In this document: piece by piece, positions 3,581-16,048 of the stretch
How the letters are laid out: every line of letters starts with the position of its first letter
How positions within the stretch are numbered: the stretch's first letter is position 1
Source: Guillardia theta CCMP2712
Taxonomy: Eukaryota; Protista; Cryptophyta
Assembly: GCF_000315625.1 (NCBI RefSeq)
Contig: NW_005434564.1
Coordinates: 59,079 to 121,232, forward strand
Length of the DNA stretch: 62,154 nucleotides
Direction of reading: 5' to 3'
Program-made: the position numbers and the translations under genes
The notes under the pieces: model-generated
Told to the model about the DNA's origin: nothing
Seen by the model: only the letters and a program-made list of their open reading frames with translations
Databases searched by the model: none

Positions 3581-3682
3581 CTTCGTGATGTTTCGCTCAC
3601 TTCCTTGAGGCCCTCGGAGGCAACAAAAGAACCAGAAAGAAGGTCTGAGGCACAGGAAGAGCGAGCGAAAATCAGAGGAGGG

Positions 3683-3830
3683 GGAGAGAGGAGAGAAAGG
3701 GGAGGAAGAAACGGAGGGAGAGAGAGGAGAGGAAGGGGAGGAAGAAACGGAGGGAGAGAGAGGAGAGGAAGGGGAGGAAGAAACGGAGGGAGAGAGAGGA
3801 GACGAAGGGGAGGAAGAAACGGAGGAGGGG
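3683..3830. repeat. Purine-rich minisatellite, about 36-bp unit, about 4 copies
   Basis: Unit GAGAGAGGAGAGGAAGGGGAGGAAGAAACGGAGGGA repeated. Confidence 0.85.
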
Positions 3831-4648: not shown

Positions 4649-5388
4649 ATGCTTTGCGTCTCTCAAACGGGCAGTTTCTCTTCATTGTTCGAAGGGGATG
4701 CGGTGGAAGACGAGTTCTTTACCAAGTTGATAGATGATTATGTCGATGTTGACAGTCATGCTGGTCGACATGGAGAGACGAGCTACATTCCAGAGACGAG
4801 CCAAGAACCTGAGAGCAAAAAAGAGGATAAGGAAGAGCTCTTTCAAAGCTGCCCCGATTTTGAGCACCTTGATGTGCGGCAGAGCTCTCCCTTGAACGCA
4901 GCTGTACAAGAGGAAGAAAGTGAAGTTTTCCATCGAGTTTTCAACAGCTCTTCCTCTTCTTCTTCTTCCTCTTCTTCAGATGATTCCCAGCCTTGGCCGG
5001 CGCCGATGGCTACACTCGAGAAGAGGAAGAGGGCTGTGGCGGCTAGTAGCATATTGATCCAATCACGGCAAGGAAAGCACTCATCCGGGCTTCCAGTGAA
5101 CATCACCATGAAGCTATTACGATCTCACTTCCACGAGACGCTTGAAACAGCTGCAGCCAAGATCGTAAGTTGATCCCCTCCTCCTGCTCCTCTCGCTGAC
5201 TCTCTTGGGACTCGCAGGGGATCGGCAAGTCCACGATGAAAGTGGTGTGCCGGAAACTCGGGCTGAAGAAGTGGCCCTACACCAACAAGGGAAAGAAGAG
5301 GACGGAGAAGAAGAAGGCCCTTGTGAAGTTGGAACAAACCTTGCGTCAGTCGCAGCAACAACAACTCCTTGCTGCAGGAAGAAAGTAG
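4649..5388 (+). CDS. RWP-RK family transcription factor, variant copy 1 (exons 4649-5164, 5218-5388)
   Basis: ITMKLLRSHFHETLETAAAKI|GIGKSTMKVVCRKLGLKKWPYTNKG; 53-nt phase-0 GT-AG intron. Confidence 0.92.
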
Positions 5389-6231
5389 AGATGAGTGACA
5401 TGTGCGTGGGAGAGCGAGGAGGTCAATGGAGGAGGATCAGAGGTTTGCTCTCGTAGGTGCGCTAAATTTTTAACGATGGACAAGTTGTCGGCACGATTGT
5501 GTGCCCGTGCAGGACCGATTGGTGTGTGTAATATTACCGTGTCTCCTTTGGAGCATGTGATATTTAAGTAAATACTAACAAACACACCAGCATTGCTCAA
5601 ATATACATGAACCCATCATCACCGCAAAAACCAACGGCACACACGCACATATCAGGCGATCAAAAGACTTGCAGGATCAAAACAGAAGACATCGGTTGAT
5701 TGGCTGCCCCAGTATGCTCGACCTCATGCATTCAGATTGGTGACGATTGGGACTTGCTGGCTTATCTAGCGTTCGGCCGAACGATTTGAGCATGATCGTG
5801 AAGAGATGTTTAGAGTAATACTTGTCAACATGACTGGAATGACTCGGATACGAGAGAGATCCAGGGCGAGAGGGAGAATACAGTAGTGGAAGTCAGATCA
5901 AGAGAAGGATAGATGGGGAAGGTATGGGTCATGATTTGTCATCGAGCAGAAAAGGAAACACTTCTGTTTCATTTCAACTTGCTCGCTTTAACGAACGAAT
6001 CGAATCAATCAAGTAATGCACTGTTGAAGGACATAAACATGCTTCTTGTTCAGAAATCCATCAGGAGCTTCCTGCCAATCGCGCACATGCCAACTTTTCA
6101 ACCCCATTTCATCATTCCCTCTGTCCTCCAATCTCTCTGTCTCCCTATCTTTCTCCACGATCTGGCAATTTCTCCCCCCATGATGATGGTGCAGGTGATC
6201 TGCCATTGGAGACTCGTCTTTTCAACGGTTA

Positions 6232-6675
6232 TCAGTCTTTCTCACTCTTCGCACCCTCCGTCTTCTCCCCTTTCCCTCCTCCCGCTGACTTGCATGCGGA
6301 GCGAGGAACGCCCTTGTTCGTGTACGGCCACTTCTCAACCCCGAGCTTGCGGCACACCATCTTCAGAGTCGACTTCCCCAGCCCCTGCCCAGCAAGTCAG
6401 CTCTCCTCCTCCTCCTCACCTCACCTCACGATCTTGGCCGCAGCCTCCTCTATCGTTTGGTGGAAGTGCTGTTCCAGAAGTTCTCGGGTGACTGTCACGA
6501 CCTTTGCCTTGCCATCCCTGTGGTTCCGAGTCTTTATGGTGATGGCAGTCTCTGCGGAGGACAGCGAGTCGCTGCTGTTGTGGTCCTCGGCTTCCTGCTC
6601 TTCGAAGATCCGGTCGATATCTTCTTCTTGTAGGACAGGTTGGGAGGAAGCAAGGAACCGATCCACGGAAGACAT
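6232..6675 (-). CDS. RWP-RK family transcription factor, variant copy 2 (intron 6385-6429; start codon uncertain)
   Basis: VTRELLEQHFHQTIEEAAAKI|GLGKSTLKMVCRKLGVEKWPYTNKG. Confidence 0.88.
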
Positions 6676-8134
6676 TCTTACGTTCTTTCCCGCATCTAGA
6701 ACGCTTCGAAAAGTTCTCAACCTGCTAGAAGTTGAGCAAATTGTCGTTGCACGTGCATGGCGGAGGGGGAGAGGGCTTTCGAGAGTCTAGCAGAATTCTC
6801 ATGCAACAACAGCATTCACAAGAGATTAATGATCATCTCTCTCAATAAAACCTTTGCAACTGAGATACGAGGAGGAACATAGTCACATTTTGGCTTATTC
6901 GGCACGCTATGATGCGAATGCAAGAAACAAATTCTATTTGGCGAAATGAACGAAGGTTATGATCGGGGCGCAAAGGACATCAAGGAGAAAAGCAAGAAGC
7001 AGAAGCAACACGCCACAGTTGCATGGATAATACTAACATCCAAGACCCATAAGAAAAAGAAGGAAACGACAAAAGAGGAAGATTATATGCGGCTGGATCG
7101 GGGCTGTTAGTCAGTCCAAGGATGTTCATTGGGAGCTCGAGCATACAGACATTCTAAGAGGATTCTAGAGGGAGGAAGAGGAGGATCGAGAAAGAAAAAC
7201 ATGACCTACAGCGGAAATAACTCGTGGGTTGTCCGGTAGGGGAGGGGGCGGGATGGTAAATCGTCGGGGACGGAAGGGGAGGACCAGTTCCTACACCAAC
7301 GTGAAAGGGCCATAGGGTTAATTAACAGCTATAGGGACTTCCCATTTTTATTAGGGGTTTATTAAAATCTGCCATGAAAAATTTGTCCCTTTTTCTGGTA
7401 CAGGAGTTTGTGTGAATCGATGATTCACACCGCACATAATTAAAATACACTTCACTGAACTTCTGGTACTATTTTGTACCAGGAAATACATCTGGGTACA
7501 GACCAAACGGAAATGTCAAGAGGTAAGCTCTCGAGAAGTCAGAGATGCGGTCTCTTCATAGTCACGTTATCGGCCAACGATGGTCAGGTTACCAAGGTAA
7601 CCTGACCTAGCGACGGTCACGGAGATATATCTTGTTTACAATGTTTTTGCCGTGGTGTAACAATAAAAACACTTTTAAGGTTGACGTGCATTTTGAACCG
7701 ATCTGGATTCCAGTCTTAGGACGAATGATGACCGGAAGTTGATCGAAAGGGTGAGAATTTTACTTTCTTTACCTGAGTACGACGTGCAATTCCCGAAAGG
7801 CTACAATATCATGGCTGTTACTGTTGTCGTGCGAGCGATGAAAACTCTCTTTTTCATTTCAGCACATGTCTCCCCTGCCCCAGTCGATATAAGACTCCAT
7901 TCGTCTGGGCTTTGCTGAACCCCTTCGCCCCTCCTGCTCTCCACATTGTCCTCGACCAAGAGCCCCACTCTGATCTTCCTTTCTCTAGCTCTCCTTTCTT
8001 CACTTCCGTTCCTTCTGCACCTTTTTGAGCGCCTTGCTTGATCTTTCGTTGCCTCAACATCCCCCTCATCTCCTCAGCACTTCTCTGTACTTCTCGCGAC
8101 TTCTCTGGATCCCAAAGACCTGTCAAAGCTTGCA

Positions 8135-8695
8135 ATGGTATCATACGCCGAGATGCTCCCTATGGATAGCCCTATTATTGAGCCTGGCTTTGATTTTAAC
8201 AGCTTCATGCTAGAAATTGAGATGAGCAATGACTTCCAGCACTTGCATCAAACACATACCGATCCTACTCTGAAGTTGTCGCTGGAGGCAGTCTCAAGCC
8301 CAGACTCAAACTTCAGCGGTAATGAGTGTGCGTCGTCAACATCACAACCAAGTTCGGATGAAGGCGTGGCAGTTCGTGTCAAATGCAGCAACTCAGCAGA
8401 GCCGACCAGGAAGCTTATCATTACGAGGTCAATGCTTGAGCAATACTTTCACGAGTCCATCGATTCCGCCGCCTTCAAACTTGTGAGTGATTCTTCTCGA
8501 TCAATCATTTTCATCATTGCTCCACCTTTCTCCCTGATCAATCATTTTTTTTTGCTAACTTGATCCTTGTAGGGGATAGGGAAGAGCACGATGAAAGTTA
8601 TTTGCAGAAGATTAGGGGTCCAGCGATGGCCTTACACGAACAAGGGCATCCCTCGCAAGAGGAAATGTGGTGTTAGCACAACAAGCCTGGCATAA
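8135..8695 (+). CDS. RWP-RK family transcription factor, variant copy 3 (intron 8483-8572)
   Basis: ITRSMLEQYFHESIDSAAFKL|GIGKSTMKVICRRLGVQRWPYTNKG. Confidence 0.92.
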
Positions 8696-9279
8696 AAGTG
8701 GCTTTCACTGCATCGAGGTGCTCGCAAACCATGTTCCCTTTCTCTTGTTTTGTATTTCAGACTGTATAAACTTAACATTGCCTTCGAGATTATACTCGGG
8801 TATTGCCTACGAATAATTCGCATGTACTTGTTGTGAAAACATTGAAATTCGCAAAGATCAAGTCGATAAATATCATTTATTGTATCGTTTCAAAATCTGT
8901 AGATGCGTATTCACCAAACGTTGACGTACATCATGGCATTCTATTGCAGCATTTTACCCATTTCAAGTTTATGAGTATGTTTTGCTTGTTATAACATCAA
9001 CAACATCATCTACGCCCTTTAGCACGTGATGGCAAGTGTTGACAGGCTCGACCACCATGCACAAGCATTTCGACTTGTAGTCTAAAAAAACCTTGGGGAA
9101 CTTTCAAGTCACGAGCAGGAATGATTTGCAGTCATGTTTACTTGATATATCAAGATCACACCGTTTCCTTCCAGCAACGTTTCGTTGTATGCCAAAAAAT
9201 AAAAATCATCGTTTCGAATAAAATAGATTTATGGCTTGTTGACGTGCCAAGGCTAAAACTACAATTTATCTCCCGGAGG

Positions 9280-9850
9280 CTCGGAGTCACGGCGGTGTGA
9301 CCGGCGCCGATGCCACCCGGCGGCTGGCGGATACACTGATGGGCCGCAGCGGGGCCGGCTGTCCGCCGGACAGGCGGCCGCGGCCGGGCGCCGCGCGCGG
9401 GCCGGGGGCTGAGGATACGCGCCGCCGGCGCGGCCGCTACGGTAAGTCACTGAGTGCCGGCCGCCCGGCCCGGCCGCATTACCAACAGCAAGCCGGAGTG
9501 TGTGACCCGGTGACCCGCGGCGCGGCGCCGCCGGGGCCGGCCGTCGGATTCCCCTGAGCCTCCGCTGGCCCAGCCTGGAGCCTGCAGTCCGATCCGGCGA
9601 GCCCGGCCTGCTACTATGGTAAACCCGGTCCGACGTCTCAAACTCCCGGTCTGGTCCGGCCCCGGTGGCCCGGGAGTGGCGCCGCCGCGCCGCTGTTCGA
9701 CTCGGGGAGTCCCGGCCGGAGTCCGATCCGATGATCGGACAGTAAGTTACTCAGTCAGAGTCAGGGTGACACGAAGAAGTCAGTCACACGGTACGGTATC
9801 ACCGGCGGTTTGACCTTTTCGAAACGCCGCTAGTGGCCGGGCCCGTGAAC
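9280..9850. other. GC-rich palindrome-dense island
   Basis: Very high GC; CCGGCCCGG, GCCGCGGC, GTCACGG and TCCGATCCGAT words; no credible protein. Confidence 0.65.
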
Positions 9851-10234
9851 CTGGCACTACGGAGGCTAGTGCGGCGGAGGCTCTACGGAGCGCCGTAGCT
9901 GGCGTAGGTGCAAAAGTTCCTACCTCCTTTATTCAGCATCGTTTCGCAAGATAGAGCCCCTTCGTATCATGACCGTCGCTAGTTGCTGACCGAGGCCGGT
10001 AAACCCCGATCTTGGCAACGACGCCTTCTTCAAGGTCAAAAGAAGGGTGGGGTGGTTTTGGAACAGTATATTCGGCAAAGTCCGATTATCGCATGTTTGA
10101 CGAGCTTTACACCTCATTTATAAACTTCTTTTTAAAAAGACGGAGCTTCCGGCAATAGCTGTTTTGAAAGAAGGTCAATTTTTGAAAAGATCTATTTTCA
10201 ATTTCCATTCCCAGGCGGTAGCGTGACACTGTCC

Positions 10235-10242
10235 TATATAGA
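10235..10242 (+). promoter_or_regulatory. Candidate TATA box for RWP-RK copy 4
   Basis: TATATAGA about 150 nt upstream of the ATG at 10390. Confidence 0.3.
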
Positions 10243-10389
10243 GTACACCCGCCTGGCCGACTGGCACGCTGCAAGCTTTGCTGTAACTCTCACCCACAGT
10301 TCCATTTTCTGCTCCTCCCGACTCTCACATATCCCAAACACACATCCCAAACACATAGCATCTGAAATCTTTCCCCAACGACAAGAAAA

Positions 10390-10964
10390 ATGAGCTACAC
10401 CGATGACATAGATAACCTGATGCTTGCAAAGTTATACAATCCCATGTGCTTCACGCACTCGACTCCCAGTACTAGCGATATCTATTGGTGTTGCCAAAGT
10501 GAAAAAGAAGTATACTCAATCTTCCAAGAAGATGCTCTTCTCGACTTTGAGCAAGAGGATGAGAATGAAGATGAGGAGACCCAGGATGAGGAGGACACCA
10601 GCTCCAAAAACAACTCCGATTCCTGCATGAGCGAAGAAACATGCCCGTCGCAGGCAAAGACTCTCAAAGAACTTGAAGAGAGCGACTATGTCATCATCCA
10701 CTCCAGGAGAGGGGACAGGGGTATGAGCAATCGCGTCATCATCACTCTTGACTTGGTCAAGAAGCACTTCCATCTAAGCATCGAAGATGCATCCTCTGCT
10801 CTGGTAAGGAACGACTTCTTGTTGTTCTGGTTGTCCTGACTTGTGTAACTCAGGGCATTGGAAAGTCAACAATGAAGCATGTATGCAGGCGTCTTGGGCT
10901 TAAGAAATGGCCCTACACTCGCAAGGAGCAGAAGAACAAGAGGAGCGCTGCTGCGCGAAGATGA
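10390..10964 (+). CDS. RWP-RK family transcription factor, variant copy 4 (intron 10804-10853)
   Basis: ITLDLVKKHFHLSIEDASSAL|GIGKSTMKHVCRRLGLKKWPYTRKE; acidic N-terminal half. Confidence 0.92.
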
Positions 10965-11751
10965 AGCAGCAGGAGCATTGCCTTTTTCCCCAAGCACTGC
11001 AATGGCGGCAGCCGATAGCATTGAAACATTACCTGTAATAAAGACTTGAACATATGGCACGAAGCCTCGATGCATCTTCTAGGGGTCTTGTTTTTTCTTG
11101 TTCTTGATTGTATGTAACAGTGATGCCTGATGCATTCCAGATGCCATGCATCGTGGAAATGGAGAAACACTTCACAGGAGTTCTTCTTGTCACGAAGAAT
11201 ATTTTCCTTCATAGTATGTGGATCATTCATCCTGTGGATATGTCTGTGTGGTCGGCTTTTTCTGTTTACTCAAAAACTTGGCAGAAACAAGTCAAGCTCG
11301 ACAGAAATGTAAAAAACATCAATAGATTTTTCAGGGTATAAGTGAAAAGAATGAGACCATGCACGGTTCTGAAGTGAACACGCAGTTGAAAACGAAGTAC
11401 ATTCCATCACCTAAATTTTCTGCTTGTGTTTCAATCCTTCACTTTTTGAAAGCCCTAACAGCACATTCGTCCGAGTCAAAAATCAGACTTGTTTGAAATC
11501 AATTCCTGCAAAAAAAGTTGAGTGGATTTGAATTTCGAAGGATGATTTGTTACTTAGTTGAATCCTTGGTATATCGTCTTTTGCCACCTACCAGTAGCCG
11601 GCATATTTGTCGACAGCTTTCATGCTTCAACGTCCAGACGCACTAGAACCCTATGGAGCAAAACATACAGCTGAATGCTTTCAAACTCTGCCTTACACCG
11701 TGCAACGATCAGTTTGAGTGAGATGCTGCAATGCAAAGCATCCTTCAGATA

Positions 11752-11849
11752 ATGGTTGAGGGATACATACGGTGCTATACCACATGCAAGCAAGAAAATC
11801 ATGGTTGAGGGATTCACGTGGTGGTATGCCACATGCAAGCAAGAAAATC
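11752..11849. repeat. Imperfect tandem duplication, about 49-bp unit, 2 copies
   Basis: ATGGTTGAGGG...CCACATGCAAGCAAGAAAATC occurs twice. Confidence 0.8.
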
Positions 11850-13526
11850 CCATGACGTTTGAGCAGTGCGTCCCTTGAGCAGAGGAAGATCATTCCCCCG
11901 CTTTCCAGCGCATGATAGATTTCCAGAACTGATAGCTATGCTATAACCAGTAGTGCTGATAGCTCGCCTCAGCTGTTCTCTGGGACACCTGGGGTGGAGG
12001 ATCAAGAGAAGAAGATTTCTGCCATGGATGGTCTTTCATCTTCTCAAGATCTCAGCTTCAAGCACATTTGGTACAGGCATGTTCGATGTCTCAATACCTC
12101 CATTACGTTCCGCTGCCATCGTGGCTTTCAAGCATCTCCCCCCTACCGGCCCCCGCCATCAGTTCAAGTTCTTTACCCAAAGTTAAGTTAAAAATCAGTA
12201 CGGGACACTGTGTCATTGGCACGGGCCGTGTGAGTCCGAGTGCTACTCAAAGTACTACTAACTTGTTTTGAGTGACTTAGCCCGAATGTTGAAGGCCGGG
12301 CCACAGGGCCCCGGTATCTTTTACTGCCAGCCACGGTGGCGGGGCCACGTGACTGCGGCGGCCCACGGCGGCTACCGTGAAAAAAAAAGTTTTGACCTCT
12401 ACGTGGCCCGTGTTCAAACTATTGGTTGTTTACAGCAGGAATCTATCGAGAACTTCGCTTCTTTGCGGTGCTAACGTACAAAATGCTTCGAGAGCTCGCG
12501 AGAGTCTCCACCGCAGCAGTAAACCAGCGAGGGGTTTATTGCTACCATCTATATTTCTCTTCGGTTTACTGCAGATTCTTCGGCAGTGCTACAGCCGGCG
12601 GCTCGAACCGTCCGATCGGCGCCGGCAGTCGAAGAGATAGAGAGGTCACGTGGAGCCGGATTGGCAGGATATAAAATAAGACCACCCGACCCCCAGAAAG
12701 AGCCCGACCCACCCGTTGTTCTGACTGTCCCGACTCTTGGTACGACATGCACAGTTTGCTAACTAAAGTTTTGAGTACAAATACTCGCTAAAAAAAATGG
12801 TGAGAACCAGCGTCGTAACTGCACCTCCCTCGGGGCGCTACCCCACTTACCCCAGGTGCTACACCCTACCCCTGCGACCGCCTATGTACCTTTATTGGTC
12901 AAAATGGATAAGCTTATTTGTTCCAAATCTTCAAACATGATCAAACAAAGATTGATATTTCAAAAACATTTCAAACCAACCACCTAAAATTTACCTATAC
13001 CCTACCCATTTATGTCCACCTACCCCTACCCACCTCGGGTATCCTTCCCGATCCCGCTGACTATAAGTGTATATATTATAGATATGGCTTTTGAGCCAAA
13101 AGACGTATATTCATACTTTACTCTGATATGAAGGTAATATCTGAGTACCCCACCCCCCCTCTCAAATGTTTATACCGGGTACAGAGCTCAAGAGGCTTTT
13201 TAAAAAGAGAGCTTTTCAACGCTTTTGTCAGCCTATGACTGTCTCAAACATCACGCCAACCCTTTCCCCCCCACAACCCCGGTAGAACACGTTTCTGCGC
13301 CTGTCCCAGCTCCTCTTAAAGCCTCCCCCCTGCCCTCCCTCTCCCTCACGCTCTAGACTTTAGGAGAAAACCCCCACCAAACCCCCAAGGACGTTTCCCC
13401 CTCTCCTTTCTTCTCTGACTACCAGCCGATTCTTCAACCAGTCACTTGCTTTCCTATCGAGTCAGCTTGATAAAGGGAAGAGCCTCGACTAGATCTTGAT
13501 ACATTTTCATTTTACACAAAGCAACC

Positions 13527-14134
13527 ATGTCCTTTTGTCTGGTTGAAGAAGAATCTTTTCTTGGCGATTACTGGAACCTCAGCTTGTTTGAGAGCATCCC
13601 ACAATGCAACTTCGTGGAAGAACACGAAGAGTTCGGTCTTGGGCAAGCAGCAATGGAGCAAGAAGGCCATGGGTCTACAAGAGAGAACATCGAAGAGTGC
13701 AGTTTCAACATTGACGAGATCTTCGAGGACTTCAATTGCCACAAGGAGGAGCCAAACCGTGATCAGGGAGTGATGGAAATCGCAAACAAGCTTCCCGGGA
13801 GTCAACACATCCGGCCATTGGGAGACGAGAAGACCGTCTATGTACGAGGAAGGAAGGAAGGGAGCGAAGGAAAGGTCGTTGAGATCACTAGGGAGATCCT
13901 TCAGGAGTTCTATGGACAGAAGATAGAAACAGTGGCTTCCCACCTGGTAAGAACTTATGAGTTTGCGACTTCCTCGAATTGCTGACATCAAAGTGCCTTC
14001 AGGGAGTAGGCAAGTCCACCATGAAGCTCGCCTGTCGCAGACTGGGGATCCACAAGTGGCCTTATACGAACAAGGGGGTCCGGAGGTCGGCTGACTGCCC
14101 GTACGGACGATGGAGCCTGAAGAACTCCTGCTGA
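13527..14134 (+). CDS. RWP-RK family transcription factor, variant copy 5 (intron 13947-14002)
   Basis: ITREILQEFYGQKIETVASHL|GVGKSTMKLACRRLGIHKWPYTNKG. Confidence 0.92.
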
Positions 14135-15349
14135 GAGGTTTTTGTTCCTGGGATGAGCGAAGGAGATTTCCACACACTGCTGCTTCTTGATAGATCATGG
14201 TTAGATTTGACGCCTAAACTGAATAAACGATTACAAGACTCGTGCTGTTCGGATCCCCCTGGTACATTGATGATGCTTAACGATTGCCCCTTGTCACTTG
14301 ACTTCTCGCGAACTCCGTCCTATGAAACAGATTCATTGTAACACTAACTTGCACTGCTCGACCTCATTCCGTTCTTGCTGCCAAGTTGAAATCTCGATTT
14401 TGCCGTCCTACTCCTCGTCAATGGTCAAGTTTCTTTCCGATTGTCCACGTTCACCTTGAAATTGCATGTTGCAGCTGCACTTTCCTTCCTTGACTTTGTC
14501 TGCTCCTGCTCTTCACGCTTTCGAATCTTTCTTTAGACAAACAAGTTTGCAGTCTGAATCTCTCTCAGCTCAACCAGAGGATGTTTCTATGGACATGTCG
14601 CTACTTTTCCTTTTCTGCTTCGCATGTTTTTTCCCGCGAAGGAACTTTCTCCTTCTTCGATCGACAGCACTTGCATCTGTGTTCCCCATCCTTCTCCATG
14701 GCATTCCTCATTCCAACTCTCTCAGCTGATTTGATGTATGATTCTACTCAGCATTCCATTGTTCGTTCTCACCCTGACTCTGCCATGACAGGCTCAATGC
14801 TGCCCCTTTCTTTGATTCGTGCAACCTTTTGTTTGTTGGCGTTTGTTTATCATTGCGTTTCTTTTGCAGCATTTCTGAACTCGCCCTCAGCCTGCACCTT
14901 GGTCCACTCCCATGTCTATCTCTGTCCTGATTCTCCATCTTCAGCCCTTCCTCGCAGCTCTCAAACTCGTTCCCCTGACCCCGCGCCCCCTGCTGAAACA
15001 TTCAGTTCTGTTTTTGTTCTCTGATTTCCTTGCCGAATTTTCAATTTTCCTCCGACTGGCGTTTCACAATTGCAGAAAGATTTTCTTTTCACTCTTTATC
15101 AATCCTTCCAAGTTCATACCATAGCTCGCATATCTTTTCTTGCATTGTTAGAATTGTCTGTGAAGAGAATTTCGATCTCCCAAGTGTACTCCGATGTCTC
15201 TACGCTCTAACCATTCCCGATCTCCAGTCTTTGAGAACAGAAGGAAACTGAAAGTTTAAAGCAAACCATATATTACAACCGAACTTTACAACCTCACAGC
15301 AGAGGGAACGAGGATCATCACTCGCATCCTCGATCAAATCTAGCACATC

Positions 15350-16048
15350 CTAAAACTTCGATGCGCTCGCGTGCCGACGACGGGGCATCCCCTTGTTCGT
15401 GTACGGCCATTTCTCAACTCCGAGCTTTCTGCAGACAATCTTCATGGTAGATTTTCCGATCCCCTGCTCCAAGTGTCAGATATGGTGACAAGGAAGGCAG
15501 CAAGTGCGGTCGACAAACAGGAGCAGACAGAAAGAGTTGGAGGAGGGAGGAGGGAGGAGGGGACAGAAAGAAATGAAGTGAGAAGTGAAGAAGCTTACAA
15601 TCTTTGCAGCAGCAATTTCCAGTGGCTCATGAAAGTGATCCGCAAGCATCTCGTGCGAAATCTCGACGGAGGGAGACTCCTGAACAGAGTTCTTCCTCCT
15701 CTTGGGGTAGACCTTGACTACGTTCTCCGTCTCCTCCATCTCTGCGTTCTCTTCCAAGTGGTGACCAGCTTCTAAGGCAAAAGACGGCAGCCTAGCTTGC
15801 ATTTCCATGGTCTCCTCGAAGAGCGGGTTCGAAGGAAACTCCAGGCTCTTGCTCTGTGCGCTCCTGCACACGTCGCAATCTCGGCTTGCAGAGCAACAGG
15901 ATGCGCAGCTCTTGAGGGACTCTTTGAGCTCGTCGGCCCAGTTGAAGACCTCCATCTCCTCGTCCATGGTAGCATGCATGCTAAGAAAATTGAAGTTCTC
16001 TATCTGAATGTCGCAGTGCTGGTCTTGGGGCAAGTCGATCATAGACAT
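15350..16048 (-). CDS. RWP-RK family transcription factor, variant copy 6 (intron 15464-15598)
   Basis: ISHEMLADHFHEPLEIAAAKI|GIGKSTMKIVCRKLGVEKWPYTNKG. Confidence 0.92.

What the first reader, a model, noticed from the sequence alone, without database searches (positions are those of the whole stretch)
4649..16048. Array of six short, variant RWP-RK genes in 11.4 kb
Seen: six two-exon genes (orientation + - + + + -), about 130-230 aa each. All share a phase-0 intron immediately before G[ILV]GKST[ML]K, while their acidic N-terminal halves and introns do not align by eye. All frames are intact. Established: short single-domain RWP-RK proteins include volvocine MID (mating-type determinant) and plant RKD (gamete identity); NLPs handle nitrate signalling; the family is expanded in cryptophytes. 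Inference: an old, selectively maintained tandem cluster, possibly a life-cycle, gametogenesis or nitrogen-starvation regulatory locus.
Basis: partly seen in the sequence, partly recalled or inferred. Interest (0 to 1): 0.75.

Follow-up and report, generated by a model that had tools for sequence, protein, structure and literature searches.

The report
Old array of six RWP-RK genes
Six small, intact and very diverged transcription-factor genes of the RWP-RK family lie side by side in the alga Guillardia theta, and most have a matching gene in a sister alga, but this genome holds hundreds of such genes in dozens of arrays, so nothing marks this array as a mating-type or nitrogen locus.

Summary
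Window 4649-16048 holds six intact two-exon genes (+ - + + + -; 228, 132, 156, 174, 183 and 187 aa). Each has a GT..AG phase-0 intron (45-135 nt) between Pfam RWP-RK positions 22 and 23, just before G[ILV]GKST[ML]K.

The genome is Guillardia theta CCMP2712. Genes 2, 4, 5 and 6 are deposited as GUITHDRAFT_117408 to 117411. Genes 1 and 3 appear to have no deposited model.

"Old and maintained" is supported:
- Synonymous sites in the domain are saturated between copies, and dN/dS is about 0.1-0.2 where it can be computed.
- The N-terminal halves match no paralogue.
- Genes 2, 3, 5 and 6 each have a one-to-one orthologue in Hanusia phi transcripts. Two of these are spliced at the same junction. 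Gene 1 has one in an unnamed ENA assembly.

"Special locus" is not supported:
- At least 150 RWP-RK hits pass Pfam's cut-off (571 candidates), and about two thirds of those lie in arrays.
- The six belong to a subfamily of about 45 genes spread over at least 15 contigs.
- The same intron site occurs in other subfamilies.
- The six are not one clade in the best tree (AU p = 0.09).
- No shared upstream motif was found.

The scan had already noted other RWP-RK arrays in this genome. Function is inferred only: small HTH-type transcription factors.

The parts
4649..5164 (+). g1 exon 1 (172 codons): acidic N-terminal part plus the first half of the RWP-RK domain
   Evidence: ORF and GTAAGT donor at 5165. 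Pfam positions 1-21. Orthologue P0004: 74% over the N-terminal part, 77% over all of exon 1.
5165..5217 (+). g1 intron, 53 nt, phase 0, GT..AG
5218..5388 (+). g1 exon 2 (56 codons plus stop): GIGKSTMK..KWPYTNKG and a Lys-rich tail
6430..6675 (-). g2 exon 1 (82 codons); gene = GUITHDRAFT_117408 (P0009)
   Evidence: Pfam positions 2-21.
6385..6429 (-). g2 intron, 45 nt, phase 0, GT..AG
6232..6384 (-). g2 exon 2 (50 codons plus stop): GLGKSTLK..KWPYTNKG
   Evidence: The Hanusia transcript P0010 is spliced at the same junction.
8135..8482 (+). g3 exon 1 (116 codons); no deposited model found
8483..8572 (+). g3 intron, 90 nt, phase 0, GT..AG
8573..8695 (+). g3 exon 2 (40 codons plus stop): GIGKSTMK..RWPYTNKG
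   Evidence: The Hanusia transcript P0007 is spliced at the same junction.
10390..10803 (+). g4 exon 1 (138 codons); gene = GUITHDRAFT_117409 (P0008)
10804..10853 (+). g4 intron, 50 nt, phase 0, GT..AG
10854..10964 (+). g4 exon 2 (36 codons plus stop): GIGKSTMK..KWPYTRK, the only copy that keeps an RK pair
13527..13946 (+). g5 exon 1 (140 codons); gene = GUITHDRAFT_117410 (P0002)
13947..14002 (+). g5 intron, 56 nt, phase 0, GT..AG
14003..14134 (+). g5 exon 2 (43 codons plus stop): GVGKSTMK..KWPYTNKG and a Cys-bearing tail
   Evidence: (30.0 bits on its own)
15599..16048 (-). g6 exon 1 (150 codons); gene = GUITHDRAFT_117411 (P0001)
15464..15598 (-). g6 intron, 135 nt, phase 0, GT..AG
15350..15463 (-). 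g6 exon 2 (37 codons plus stop): GIGKSTMK..KWPYTNKG and an Arg-rich tail
   Evidence: (29.4 bits on its own)

Best explanation
This is an old tandem array, with two inversions, of six paralogous genes of Guillardia theta. Each encodes a minimal RWP-RK transcription factor.

Each protein has three parts: a paralogue-specific acidic N-terminal region (58-148 aa), a compact module of about 65 aa, and a short basic tail. The module is predicted to be a beta-hairpin followed by three helices, of which the last two look like a helix-turn-helix. The hairpin pairs the motif [VI]x[VI]..R with the strand VxI[TS]. The module is followed by an invariant W-P-Y.

Inferred mechanism: the module binds DNA, with the helix KSTMKxxCRxLG as the recognition helix. 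The basic tail helps nuclear import or backbone contacts. The acidic region recruits partners or activates transcription, and differs from copy to copy, so each copy has its own partners and its own regulation.

The six belong to a subfamily of about 45 genes in which the name-giving RWPxRK is replaced by [KR]WPY[TKRV]x[KGV]. The phase-0 intron sits in the turn of the helix-turn-helix. It is an old intron site of the family in this genome and has been lost in the recently amplified intronless arrays.

The duplications that made the six copies predate the Guillardia/Hanusia split, and each copy has since been kept by purifying selection. Which process they regulate is unknown.

Shown: gene structures, family membership, age, orthologues, and how common such arrays are. 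Inferred: DNA binding, activation, nuclear localisation, and division of roles among the copies.
For: - Gene models and splice sites.
- Pfam RWP-RK: exon 1 covers positions 1-22 and exon 2 positions 23-44. The deposited spliced proteins P0001 and P0002 score 51.3 and 49.1 bits against a cut-off of 29.3.
- Organism and deposited models: GUITHDRAFT_117408 to 117411. The assembly is 87.1 Mb in 669 contigs.
- Age and constraint within the 52-codon domain: amino-acid identity 48-71%, pS 0.66-0.91 (saturated), dN 0.23-0.53, dN/dS 0.10-0.21 where it can be computed.
- Orthologues: N-terminal regions hit only the cross-species orthologue (51-76% identity) and no paralogue at E <= 0.001. Each G. theta gene pairs with its orthologue at 99-100% bootstrap. 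The Hanusia transcripts P0007 and P0010 are spliced exactly at the predicted junction.
- Subfamily: the profile score drops from 51.9 to 47.9 bits after about 45 hits. The subfamily clade has 100/99 support.
- Intron: the same intron occurs in about 20 subfamily members on contigs C10, C16, C47, C77, C78, C104 and C128.
- Structure: the AlphaFold2 model of P0001 has pLDDT 85-94 over residues 111-170, with strands 110-113 and 128-131 and helices 132-136, 143-150 and 154-163. The best, but weak, structural neighbours of that part are small HTH DNA-binding domains such as NtrC1/NtrC4, Fis, GcrA and a phage repressor.
- Charge: acidic N-termini and basic tails.
Against: - No direct expression evidence for these six genes in G. 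theta itself. The deposited proteins are not listed under the MMETSP source, unlike some paralogues.
- No orthologue of g4 was found.
- Two Hanusia transcripts (P0005, P0006) retain the intron.
- Structural matches are not significant (Foldseek E >= 1.1; VIA Z <= 3.7), so the helix-turn-helix reading rests on a predicted model and on what is generally assumed for RWP-RK.
- The RK pair of the name-giving motif is missing in five of the six, so DNA binding could differ from that of characterised RWP-RK proteins.
- The tree has only 52 columns and many forks are unresolved.
Confidence: 0.72

Rival explanations
1. The array is a life-cycle or mating-type locus. On this reading the six MID/RKD-like minimal RWP-RK factors determine gamete or morph identity, and the locus would be hemizygous or strain-specific.
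For: The architecture (a short protein with a single C-terminal RWP-RK domain) is that of MID and RKD. The copies are old and individually conserved. Sex has been reported for cryptophytes (PMC8557840 introduction), and a Rhodomonas preprint raises the same idea for its 56 RWP-RK genes (10.1101/2023.09.20.558689).
Against: The same architecture is shared by hundreds of genes in dozens of arrays in this genome, so it does not single out this locus. Orthologues of four copies are present in the transcripts of one Hanusia strain, which shows nothing sex-limited. No relation to MID or RKD was tested. No strain or read-depth data were available.
Confidence: 0.05
2. The six are nutrient-response regulators that work like NLP or NIT2, switched on under nitrogen (or other nutrient) starvation and co-regulated as a block.
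For: RWP-RK factors control nitrate responses in plants and green algae (established knowledge, cited). Other RWP-RK genes of this genome are fused to SPX or GAF sensor domains according to earlier unchecked notes of this scan.
Against: These six carry no GAF, PB1 or SPX domain (Pfam scans). No 6- to 8-mer is shared by the six 500-nt upstream regions beyond shuffled expectation, so there is no sign of common cis-regulation. No expression data were available.
Confidence: 0.12
3. The copies are decaying, unexpressed by-products of the family's runaway tandem duplication and have no function.
For: Two of the six have no deposited model. Two Hanusia contigs retain the intron.
Against: All 12 exons are open and all splice sites are canonical. 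dN/dS is 0.1-0.2 with saturated dS. Fifteen of the first 30 residues of exon 2 are invariant. One-to-one orthologues, including paralogue-specific N-terminal motifs, are kept in Hanusia transcripts, two of them correctly spliced.
Confidence: 0.04

Closest known systems
Pfam RWP-RK domain family (PF02042), as in plant NIN/NLP and RKD and in Chlamydomonas NIT2 and MID
   Same: Significant match over profile positions 2-44 (49-55 bits against a cut-off of 29.3). The core ..HF...E.AA..lG...T.lK..CR.lG...WP is conserved. The module is predicted to be helical and HTH-like.
   Different: The name-giving RWPxRK is [KR]WPYTNKG in five copies and KWPYTRK in g4. The match stops at profile position 44 of 49. 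The subfamily also has a conserved strand motif 8-10 residues upstream, which is predicted to form a beta-hairpin with the start of the domain.
Volvocine MID and plant RKD proteins (minimal RWP-RK factors of gamete identity)
   Same: Short proteins (132-228 aa) whose only recognisable domain is a C-terminal RWP-RK domain.
   Different: No orthology was shown or tested. There is no evidence of mating-type linkage. Here the architecture is the commonest one of a family of several hundred genes.
Other RWP-RK tandem arrays of Guillardia theta, for example C2:281.9-291.2 kb (7 copies), C50:148.8-159.3 kb (8), C14:235-239 kb (3) and C104:89.6-104.7 kb (10)
   Same: Tandem clusters of short RWP-RK genes 1-3 kb apart. 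The C2, C14, C10 and C12 arrays belong to the same subfamily as the six.
   Different: Those arrays are young or homogenised: the domain is identical in 6 of the 7 C2 copies examined and in all 3 C14 copies, and most lack the intron. The six copies here differ at 29-52% of domain residues, have N-termini that cannot be aligned, and keep the intron.
NLP (NIN-like proteins)
   Same: They share the RWP-RK DNA-binding domain.
   Different: No GAF-like N-terminal region and no PB1 domain. The proteins are 132-228 aa, against roughly 800-1000 aa for NLPs by general knowledge.

Membership tests
RWP-RK domain family (PF02042) | Score over Pfam's gathering cut-off (29.3 bits) across the domain | tested here: met
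   P0001 (g6) scores 51.3 bits and P0002 (g5) 49.1 bits over positions 2-44 of 49. P0008 (g4) and P0009 (g2) carry a precomputed PF02042 hit. Exon 2 of g5 and g6 alone scores 30.0 and 29.4 bits. For g1 and g3 only the separate exons were scanned: exon 1 covers positions 1-22 and exon 2 covers 29-44 for g1. The spliced orthologue of g3 (P0007) scores 55.4 bits.
RWP-RK domain family (PF02042) | The name-giving motif R-W-P-x-R-K | tested here: not met
   W-P-Y is invariant, but the motif reads [KR]WPYTNKG in g1, g2, g3, g5 and g6 and KWPYTRK in g4. The loss of RK is subfamily-wide.
RWP-RK domain family (PF02042) | Helix-turn-helix-like DNA-binding fold | tested here: inconclusive
   The AlphaFold2 model is confident (pLDDT 85-94) for a hairpin plus three helices. 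The nearest solved folds are small HTH domains, but only at Foldseek E >= 1.1 and VIA Z <= 3.7. No solved RWP-RK structure was found by sequence.
MID/RKD-type minimal RWP-RK sex or gamete regulators | Short protein with a single C-terminal RWP-RK domain | tested here: met
   132-228 aa, with no other Pfam domain.
MID/RKD-type minimal RWP-RK sex or gamete regulators | Phylogenetic grouping with MID or RKD sequences | not tested
   No MID or RKD sequences were fetched. The tree held only G. theta, Hanusia and ENA sequences.
MID/RKD-type minimal RWP-RK sex or gamete regulators | Presence in one mating type only, or hemizygosity, and induction on gametogenesis or nitrogen starvation | not testable with these tools
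NLP (NIN-like proteins) | GAF-like N-terminal region and C-terminal PB1 domain flanking RWP-RK | tested here: not met
   No GAF or PB1 hit at E <= 10 on the exons or at E <= 0.01 on the spliced proteins. The proteins end 11-31 residues after the domain.

The most novel reading that the evidence does not exclude
The array could be, or be part of, a cryptophyte life-cycle or mating-type determining region. On this reading, a set of anciently diverged MID-like minimal RWP-RK factors specifies gamete or morph identity through different combinations. It would show up as strain- or morph-specific presence, hemizygosity or expression. Nothing here supports this beyond the architecture and the age of the copies, and nothing excludes it.
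Probability: 0.05. Interest if true: 0.75.

Novelty: new member of a known kind. Interest (0 to 1): 0.3.

Why it matters
If the reading holds, the locus is a clean example of the old layer of the very large RWP-RK expansion in cryptophytes. It has six paralogues that have stayed neighbours since before Guillardia and Hanusia split, each with its own conserved N-terminal region. Most other arrays in the genome are young or homogenised.

The locus gives three small, usable results:
- Two gene models that appear to be missing from the deposited annotation (g1 and g3).
- A definition of a subfamily of about 45 genes that has lost the RK of RWPxRK and gained a conserved upstream strand.
- Evidence that the intron in the turn of the helix-turn-helix is an old site of the family, lost in the amplified intronless arrays.

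It opens no long-standing question. Its biological role remains unknown, and it is not distinguishable from dozens of similar loci without expression or population data.

Tried and rejected
1. Shared cis-element. I looked for 6-, 7- and 8-mers shared by the six 500-nt upstream regions and compared them with 200 Markov shuffles. Nothing exceeded chance.
2. Extra degenerate copies in the window. tblastn of all 12 exons against the window found no seventh copy of this subfamily. It found only an unrelated canonical RWP-RK gene near 48.3-48.7 kb.
3. One clade for the six. They are not recovered as one clade in the best trees, but the AU test does not reject it (p = 0.09), so this stays open.
4. 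N-terminal kinship of g5 with its tree sister on C77/C78. There is only a non-significant BLASTP match (E = 0.13).
5. Solved structures. There is no sequence relative in the PDB and no significant fold match.
6. Literature. No paper in the searchable library names GUITHDRAFT_117408 to 117411 or describes RWP-RK arrays in Guillardia. The only cryptophyte mention is 56 RWP-RK genes in Rhodomonas salina.
8. Wider taxon range of the subfamily. The last word search gave only 13 candidates, all from Guillardia, Hanusia or ENA, which is too few to say that other cryptophytes lack it. The large profile search was not used, because no claim here rests on absence of relatives.
9. tRNA genes: none in the window. 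Tandem repeats: nothing that bears on the array.

Joined step left out. Spliced proteins were used only through the database ids P0001, P0002, P0008 and P0009. Inside scripts, the last 24 codons of exon 1 and the first 28 codons of exon 2 were placed side by side for identity, dN/dS and the trees.
Full report
**What is there.** The window is contig C110:59079-121232 of an 87.1-Mb assembly in 669 contigs. Protein hits name the organism as Guillardia theta CCMP2712.

Between 4649 and 16048 I confirm six two-exon genes in the orientation + - + + + -. Exon and intron coordinates are listed under "parts" and in the observation check. The proteins are 228, 132, 156, 174, 183 and 187 aa. All introns are GT..AG and phase 0, and are 53, 45, 90, 50, 56 and 135 nt long. 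Exon 2 always opens with G[ILV]GKST[ML]K, and 15 of its first 30 residues are invariant.

Pfam places the ends of exon 1 on RWP-RK positions 1-22 and the starts of exon 2 on positions 23-44. The intron therefore splits the domain.

Four of the genes are deposited: g2 = GUITHDRAFT_117408, g4 = 117409, g5 = 117410 and g6 = 117411. Their lengths, and the junctions read for g5 and g6, match my models. The spliced proteins P0001 and P0002 score 51.3 and 49.1 bits against a cut-off of 29.3. For g1 and g3 no G. theta model came back although close orthologues did. The locus numbers of g2 and g4 are consecutive, so g3 at least looks unannotated.

**The joined step.** Joined models of g1 and g3 have no reference and were not sent to any tool. 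In scripts I only put the last 24 codons of exon 1 beside the first 28 codons of exon 2.

**How old, and is it maintained?** Over those 52 codons the six copies share 48-71% of residues. The proportion of synonymous differences is 0.66-0.91, which is saturated. dN is 0.23-0.53, and dN/dS is 0.10-0.21 for the pairs where it can be computed.

The N-terminal parts are acidic (pI 4.05-4.63) and align poorly (31% mean column identity). In an all-against-all BLASTP with the N-termini of 44 subfamily genes, each of g1, g2, g3, g5 and g6 hits only one sequence at E <= 0.001. That sequence is its counterpart from another organism, at 51-76% identity:
- Hanusia phi transcripts P0010 (g2), P0007 (g3), P0006 (g5) and P0005 (g6).
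- An unnamed ENA assembly, P0004 (g1) and P0003 (g3).

In the domain tree each G. theta gene pairs with its counterpart at 99-100% ultrafast bootstrap.

P0007 and P0010 are spliced exactly at the predicted junction. P0005 and P0006 retain the intron. Paralogue-specific features are kept across the two genera: a Cys-rich stretch in the N-terminus of g6, and a Cys-bearing C-terminal tail in g5.

So the duplications predate the Guillardia/Hanusia split and the copies have been kept. No orthologue of g4 was found. I have no transcript evidence from G. theta itself for any of the six.

**How special is it?** Not very.
- A Pfam search of the whole assembly gave 571 first-look candidates. Only 150 were scored, and all 150 pass the cut-off.
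- By my hand count of that list, 67 hits lie in 18 arrays of three or more within about 10 kb. Examples are seven on C2:281.9-291.2 kb and eight on C50:148.8-159.3 kb. A further 34 lie in 17 pairs. That is about two thirds of the 150.
- The six genes here are not even on that list, because their domain is split.
- A profile of their exon 2 ranks the six first and then about 39 further loci before the score drops from 51.9 to 47.9 bits. This defines a subfamily of about 45 genes on at least 15 contigs with the core HFHESLE.AA.KI | GIGKSTMK.VCR.LG..KWPY.
- About 20 of these carry the same phase-0 intron (45-60 nt; contigs C10, C16, C47, C77, C78, C104, C128). About 25 lack it, mostly in near-identical tandem arrays on C2, C10, C12 and C14.
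- The same acceptor position (cag|GGxATC) also occurs in other RWP-RK subfamilies, on C104:89-98 kb, C76, C80 and C128:140 kb.

The intron is therefore an old site of the family in this genome, not a mark of this array.

**Do the six form a clade?** The subfamily is well separated from canonical paralogues (100/99). Inside it the 52 columns resolve little.
- In the first tree g2, g3 and g6 group together (81/86), g5 groups with the C77/C78 gene (99/88), and g4 falls near C47, C128 and C104.
- With the orthologues added, g1, g2, g3, g5 and g6 plus C77/C78 form a weak group (84/74), and g4 stays outside.
- Forcing the six together costs 13.5 log-likelihood units. The AU p is 0.09, which is not a rejection.
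- WPYTNKG is shared by five of the six and their orthologues. It recurs in C128:74447 and, as WPFTNKG, in C47:442198.

My reading is that this is mostly a local, old radiation with one dispersed relative. The origin of g4 is open.

**What the proteins look like.** An alignment of spliced and intronless subfamily members shows a nearly invariant extra motif, [VI]V[RK][IV][QHK][ST]R, 8-10 residues before the Pfam domain.

The AlphaFold2 model of g6 (P0001, 21-row alignment) has pLDDT 85-94 for residues 111-170. It predicts strand 110-113 paired with strand 128-131, then helices 132-136, 143-150 and 154-163. The N-terminal 100 residues are of low confidence. The intron falls in the turn between the last two helices.

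Structural neighbours of this part are small HTH DNA-binding domains (NtrC1/NtrC4, Fis, GcrA, a phage immunity repressor, SpoIIID), but only at Foldseek E >= 1.1 and VIA Z <= 3.7. These values do not discriminate. No solved relative exists by sequence.

The tails after WPY are basic (4-10 Lys+Arg in 11-31 residues).

**Mechanism (inferred).** These are small transcription factors. The hairpin-plus-HTH module binds DNA. The basic tail aids import or binding. The divergent acidic N-termini give each copy its own partners.

I found no common upstream word in the six promoters beyond chance. Nothing therefore suggests that the array is regulated as a block.

**Comparison with the known.**
- They are members of the Pfam RWP-RK family by score, but lack the RK of the name-giving motif. 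g4 keeps an RK, shifted by one residue.
- They work like MID/RKD-type minimal factors in architecture only. Relatedness to MID or RKD was not tested, and mating-type linkage cannot be tested here.
- They are not NLPs: there is no GAF and no PB1.

**Literature.** No paper in the searchable library mentions these loci or RWP-RK arrays in Guillardia. A Rhodomonas salina preprint lists 56 RWP-RK genes and speculates about sex.

**Earlier notes of this scan.** Notes s1-436909, s1-437233 and s1-448816 had already reported other RWP-RK arrays in this genome and called them one of dozens. My own count agrees.

**Tools.** I therefore could not get the DNA of the ENA orthologues for orthologue dN/dS or synteny.

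**Verdict.** The array is real, old and well-kept, and it is one ordinary member of a very large lineage-specific family. The functional speculation is untested, and nothing found here favours it.

Noticed in passing
window 48340-48434 and 48628-48690 (+): A seventh RWP-RK gene of the canonical type. The first half reads ..HFDKPEKQAAAQLGICLTSLKKICR and a later exon reads RRWPYRKIHSINKRG. The intron splits the domain at a different place, and the gene lies between assembly gaps. It does not belong to the subfamily of the six.
   Followed up: partly
window 4649-5388 (g1) and 8135-8695 (g3): No deposited G. theta protein model was returned for these two intact genes, although close orthologues were (P0004, P0003, P0007). 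The locus tags 117408 (g2) and 117409 (g4) are consecutive, so g3, which lies between them, looks unannotated.
   Followed up: partly
window 5045-5062, 6558-6541, 8375-8392, 10693-10710, 13836-13853, 15712-15695 (approximate); also L063, L064, L065, L070: A subfamily-wide motif [VI]V[RK][IV][QHK][ST]R lies 8-10 residues before the Pfam domain. In the AlphaFold2 model it pairs as a beta-hairpin with the VxI[TS] strand that opens the domain. The conserved unit is therefore longer than the Pfam RWP-RK model.
   Followed up: partly
window 15909-15862 (-, g6) and 14096-14131 (+, g5): g6 has an N-terminal Cys cluster (C-x2-CC-x6-C-x2-C) and g5 has a C-terminal Cys-x10-Cys tail. Both are kept in the Hanusia phi orthologues (P0005, P0006). 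They might be small metal or redox sites.
   Followed up: no
L075 (C104:88500-98499), L076, L077, L078: Other RWP-RK subfamilies (GISLTSLKSACRRLG..WPY type) have an intron acceptor at exactly the same domain position (cag|GGxATC). The C104 copies have identical intron ends, so that array is young.
   Followed up: partly
L034 (C78:150228-153314) and L035 (C77:395572-398658): Two contigs carry nearly identical copies of the gene that is sister to g5 in the tree. They are either haplotigs or a recent segmental duplication.
   Followed up: no
L066 (C2:280000-289999), L071 (C14:233500-241000), L063, L064: The intronless arrays of the same subfamily have identical 52-residue domains but different N-termini (six examined C2 copies, three C14 copies). 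This is the reverse pattern of the array studied here and fits recent amplification or homogenisation.
   Followed up: partly
window 3677-3825 and 11752-11849: A 36-nt tandem repeat (4.1 copies, 97% matches) lies about 0.8 kb upstream of g1. A 49-nt repeat (2 copies) lies between g4 and g5. No link to the genes was seen.
   Followed up: no
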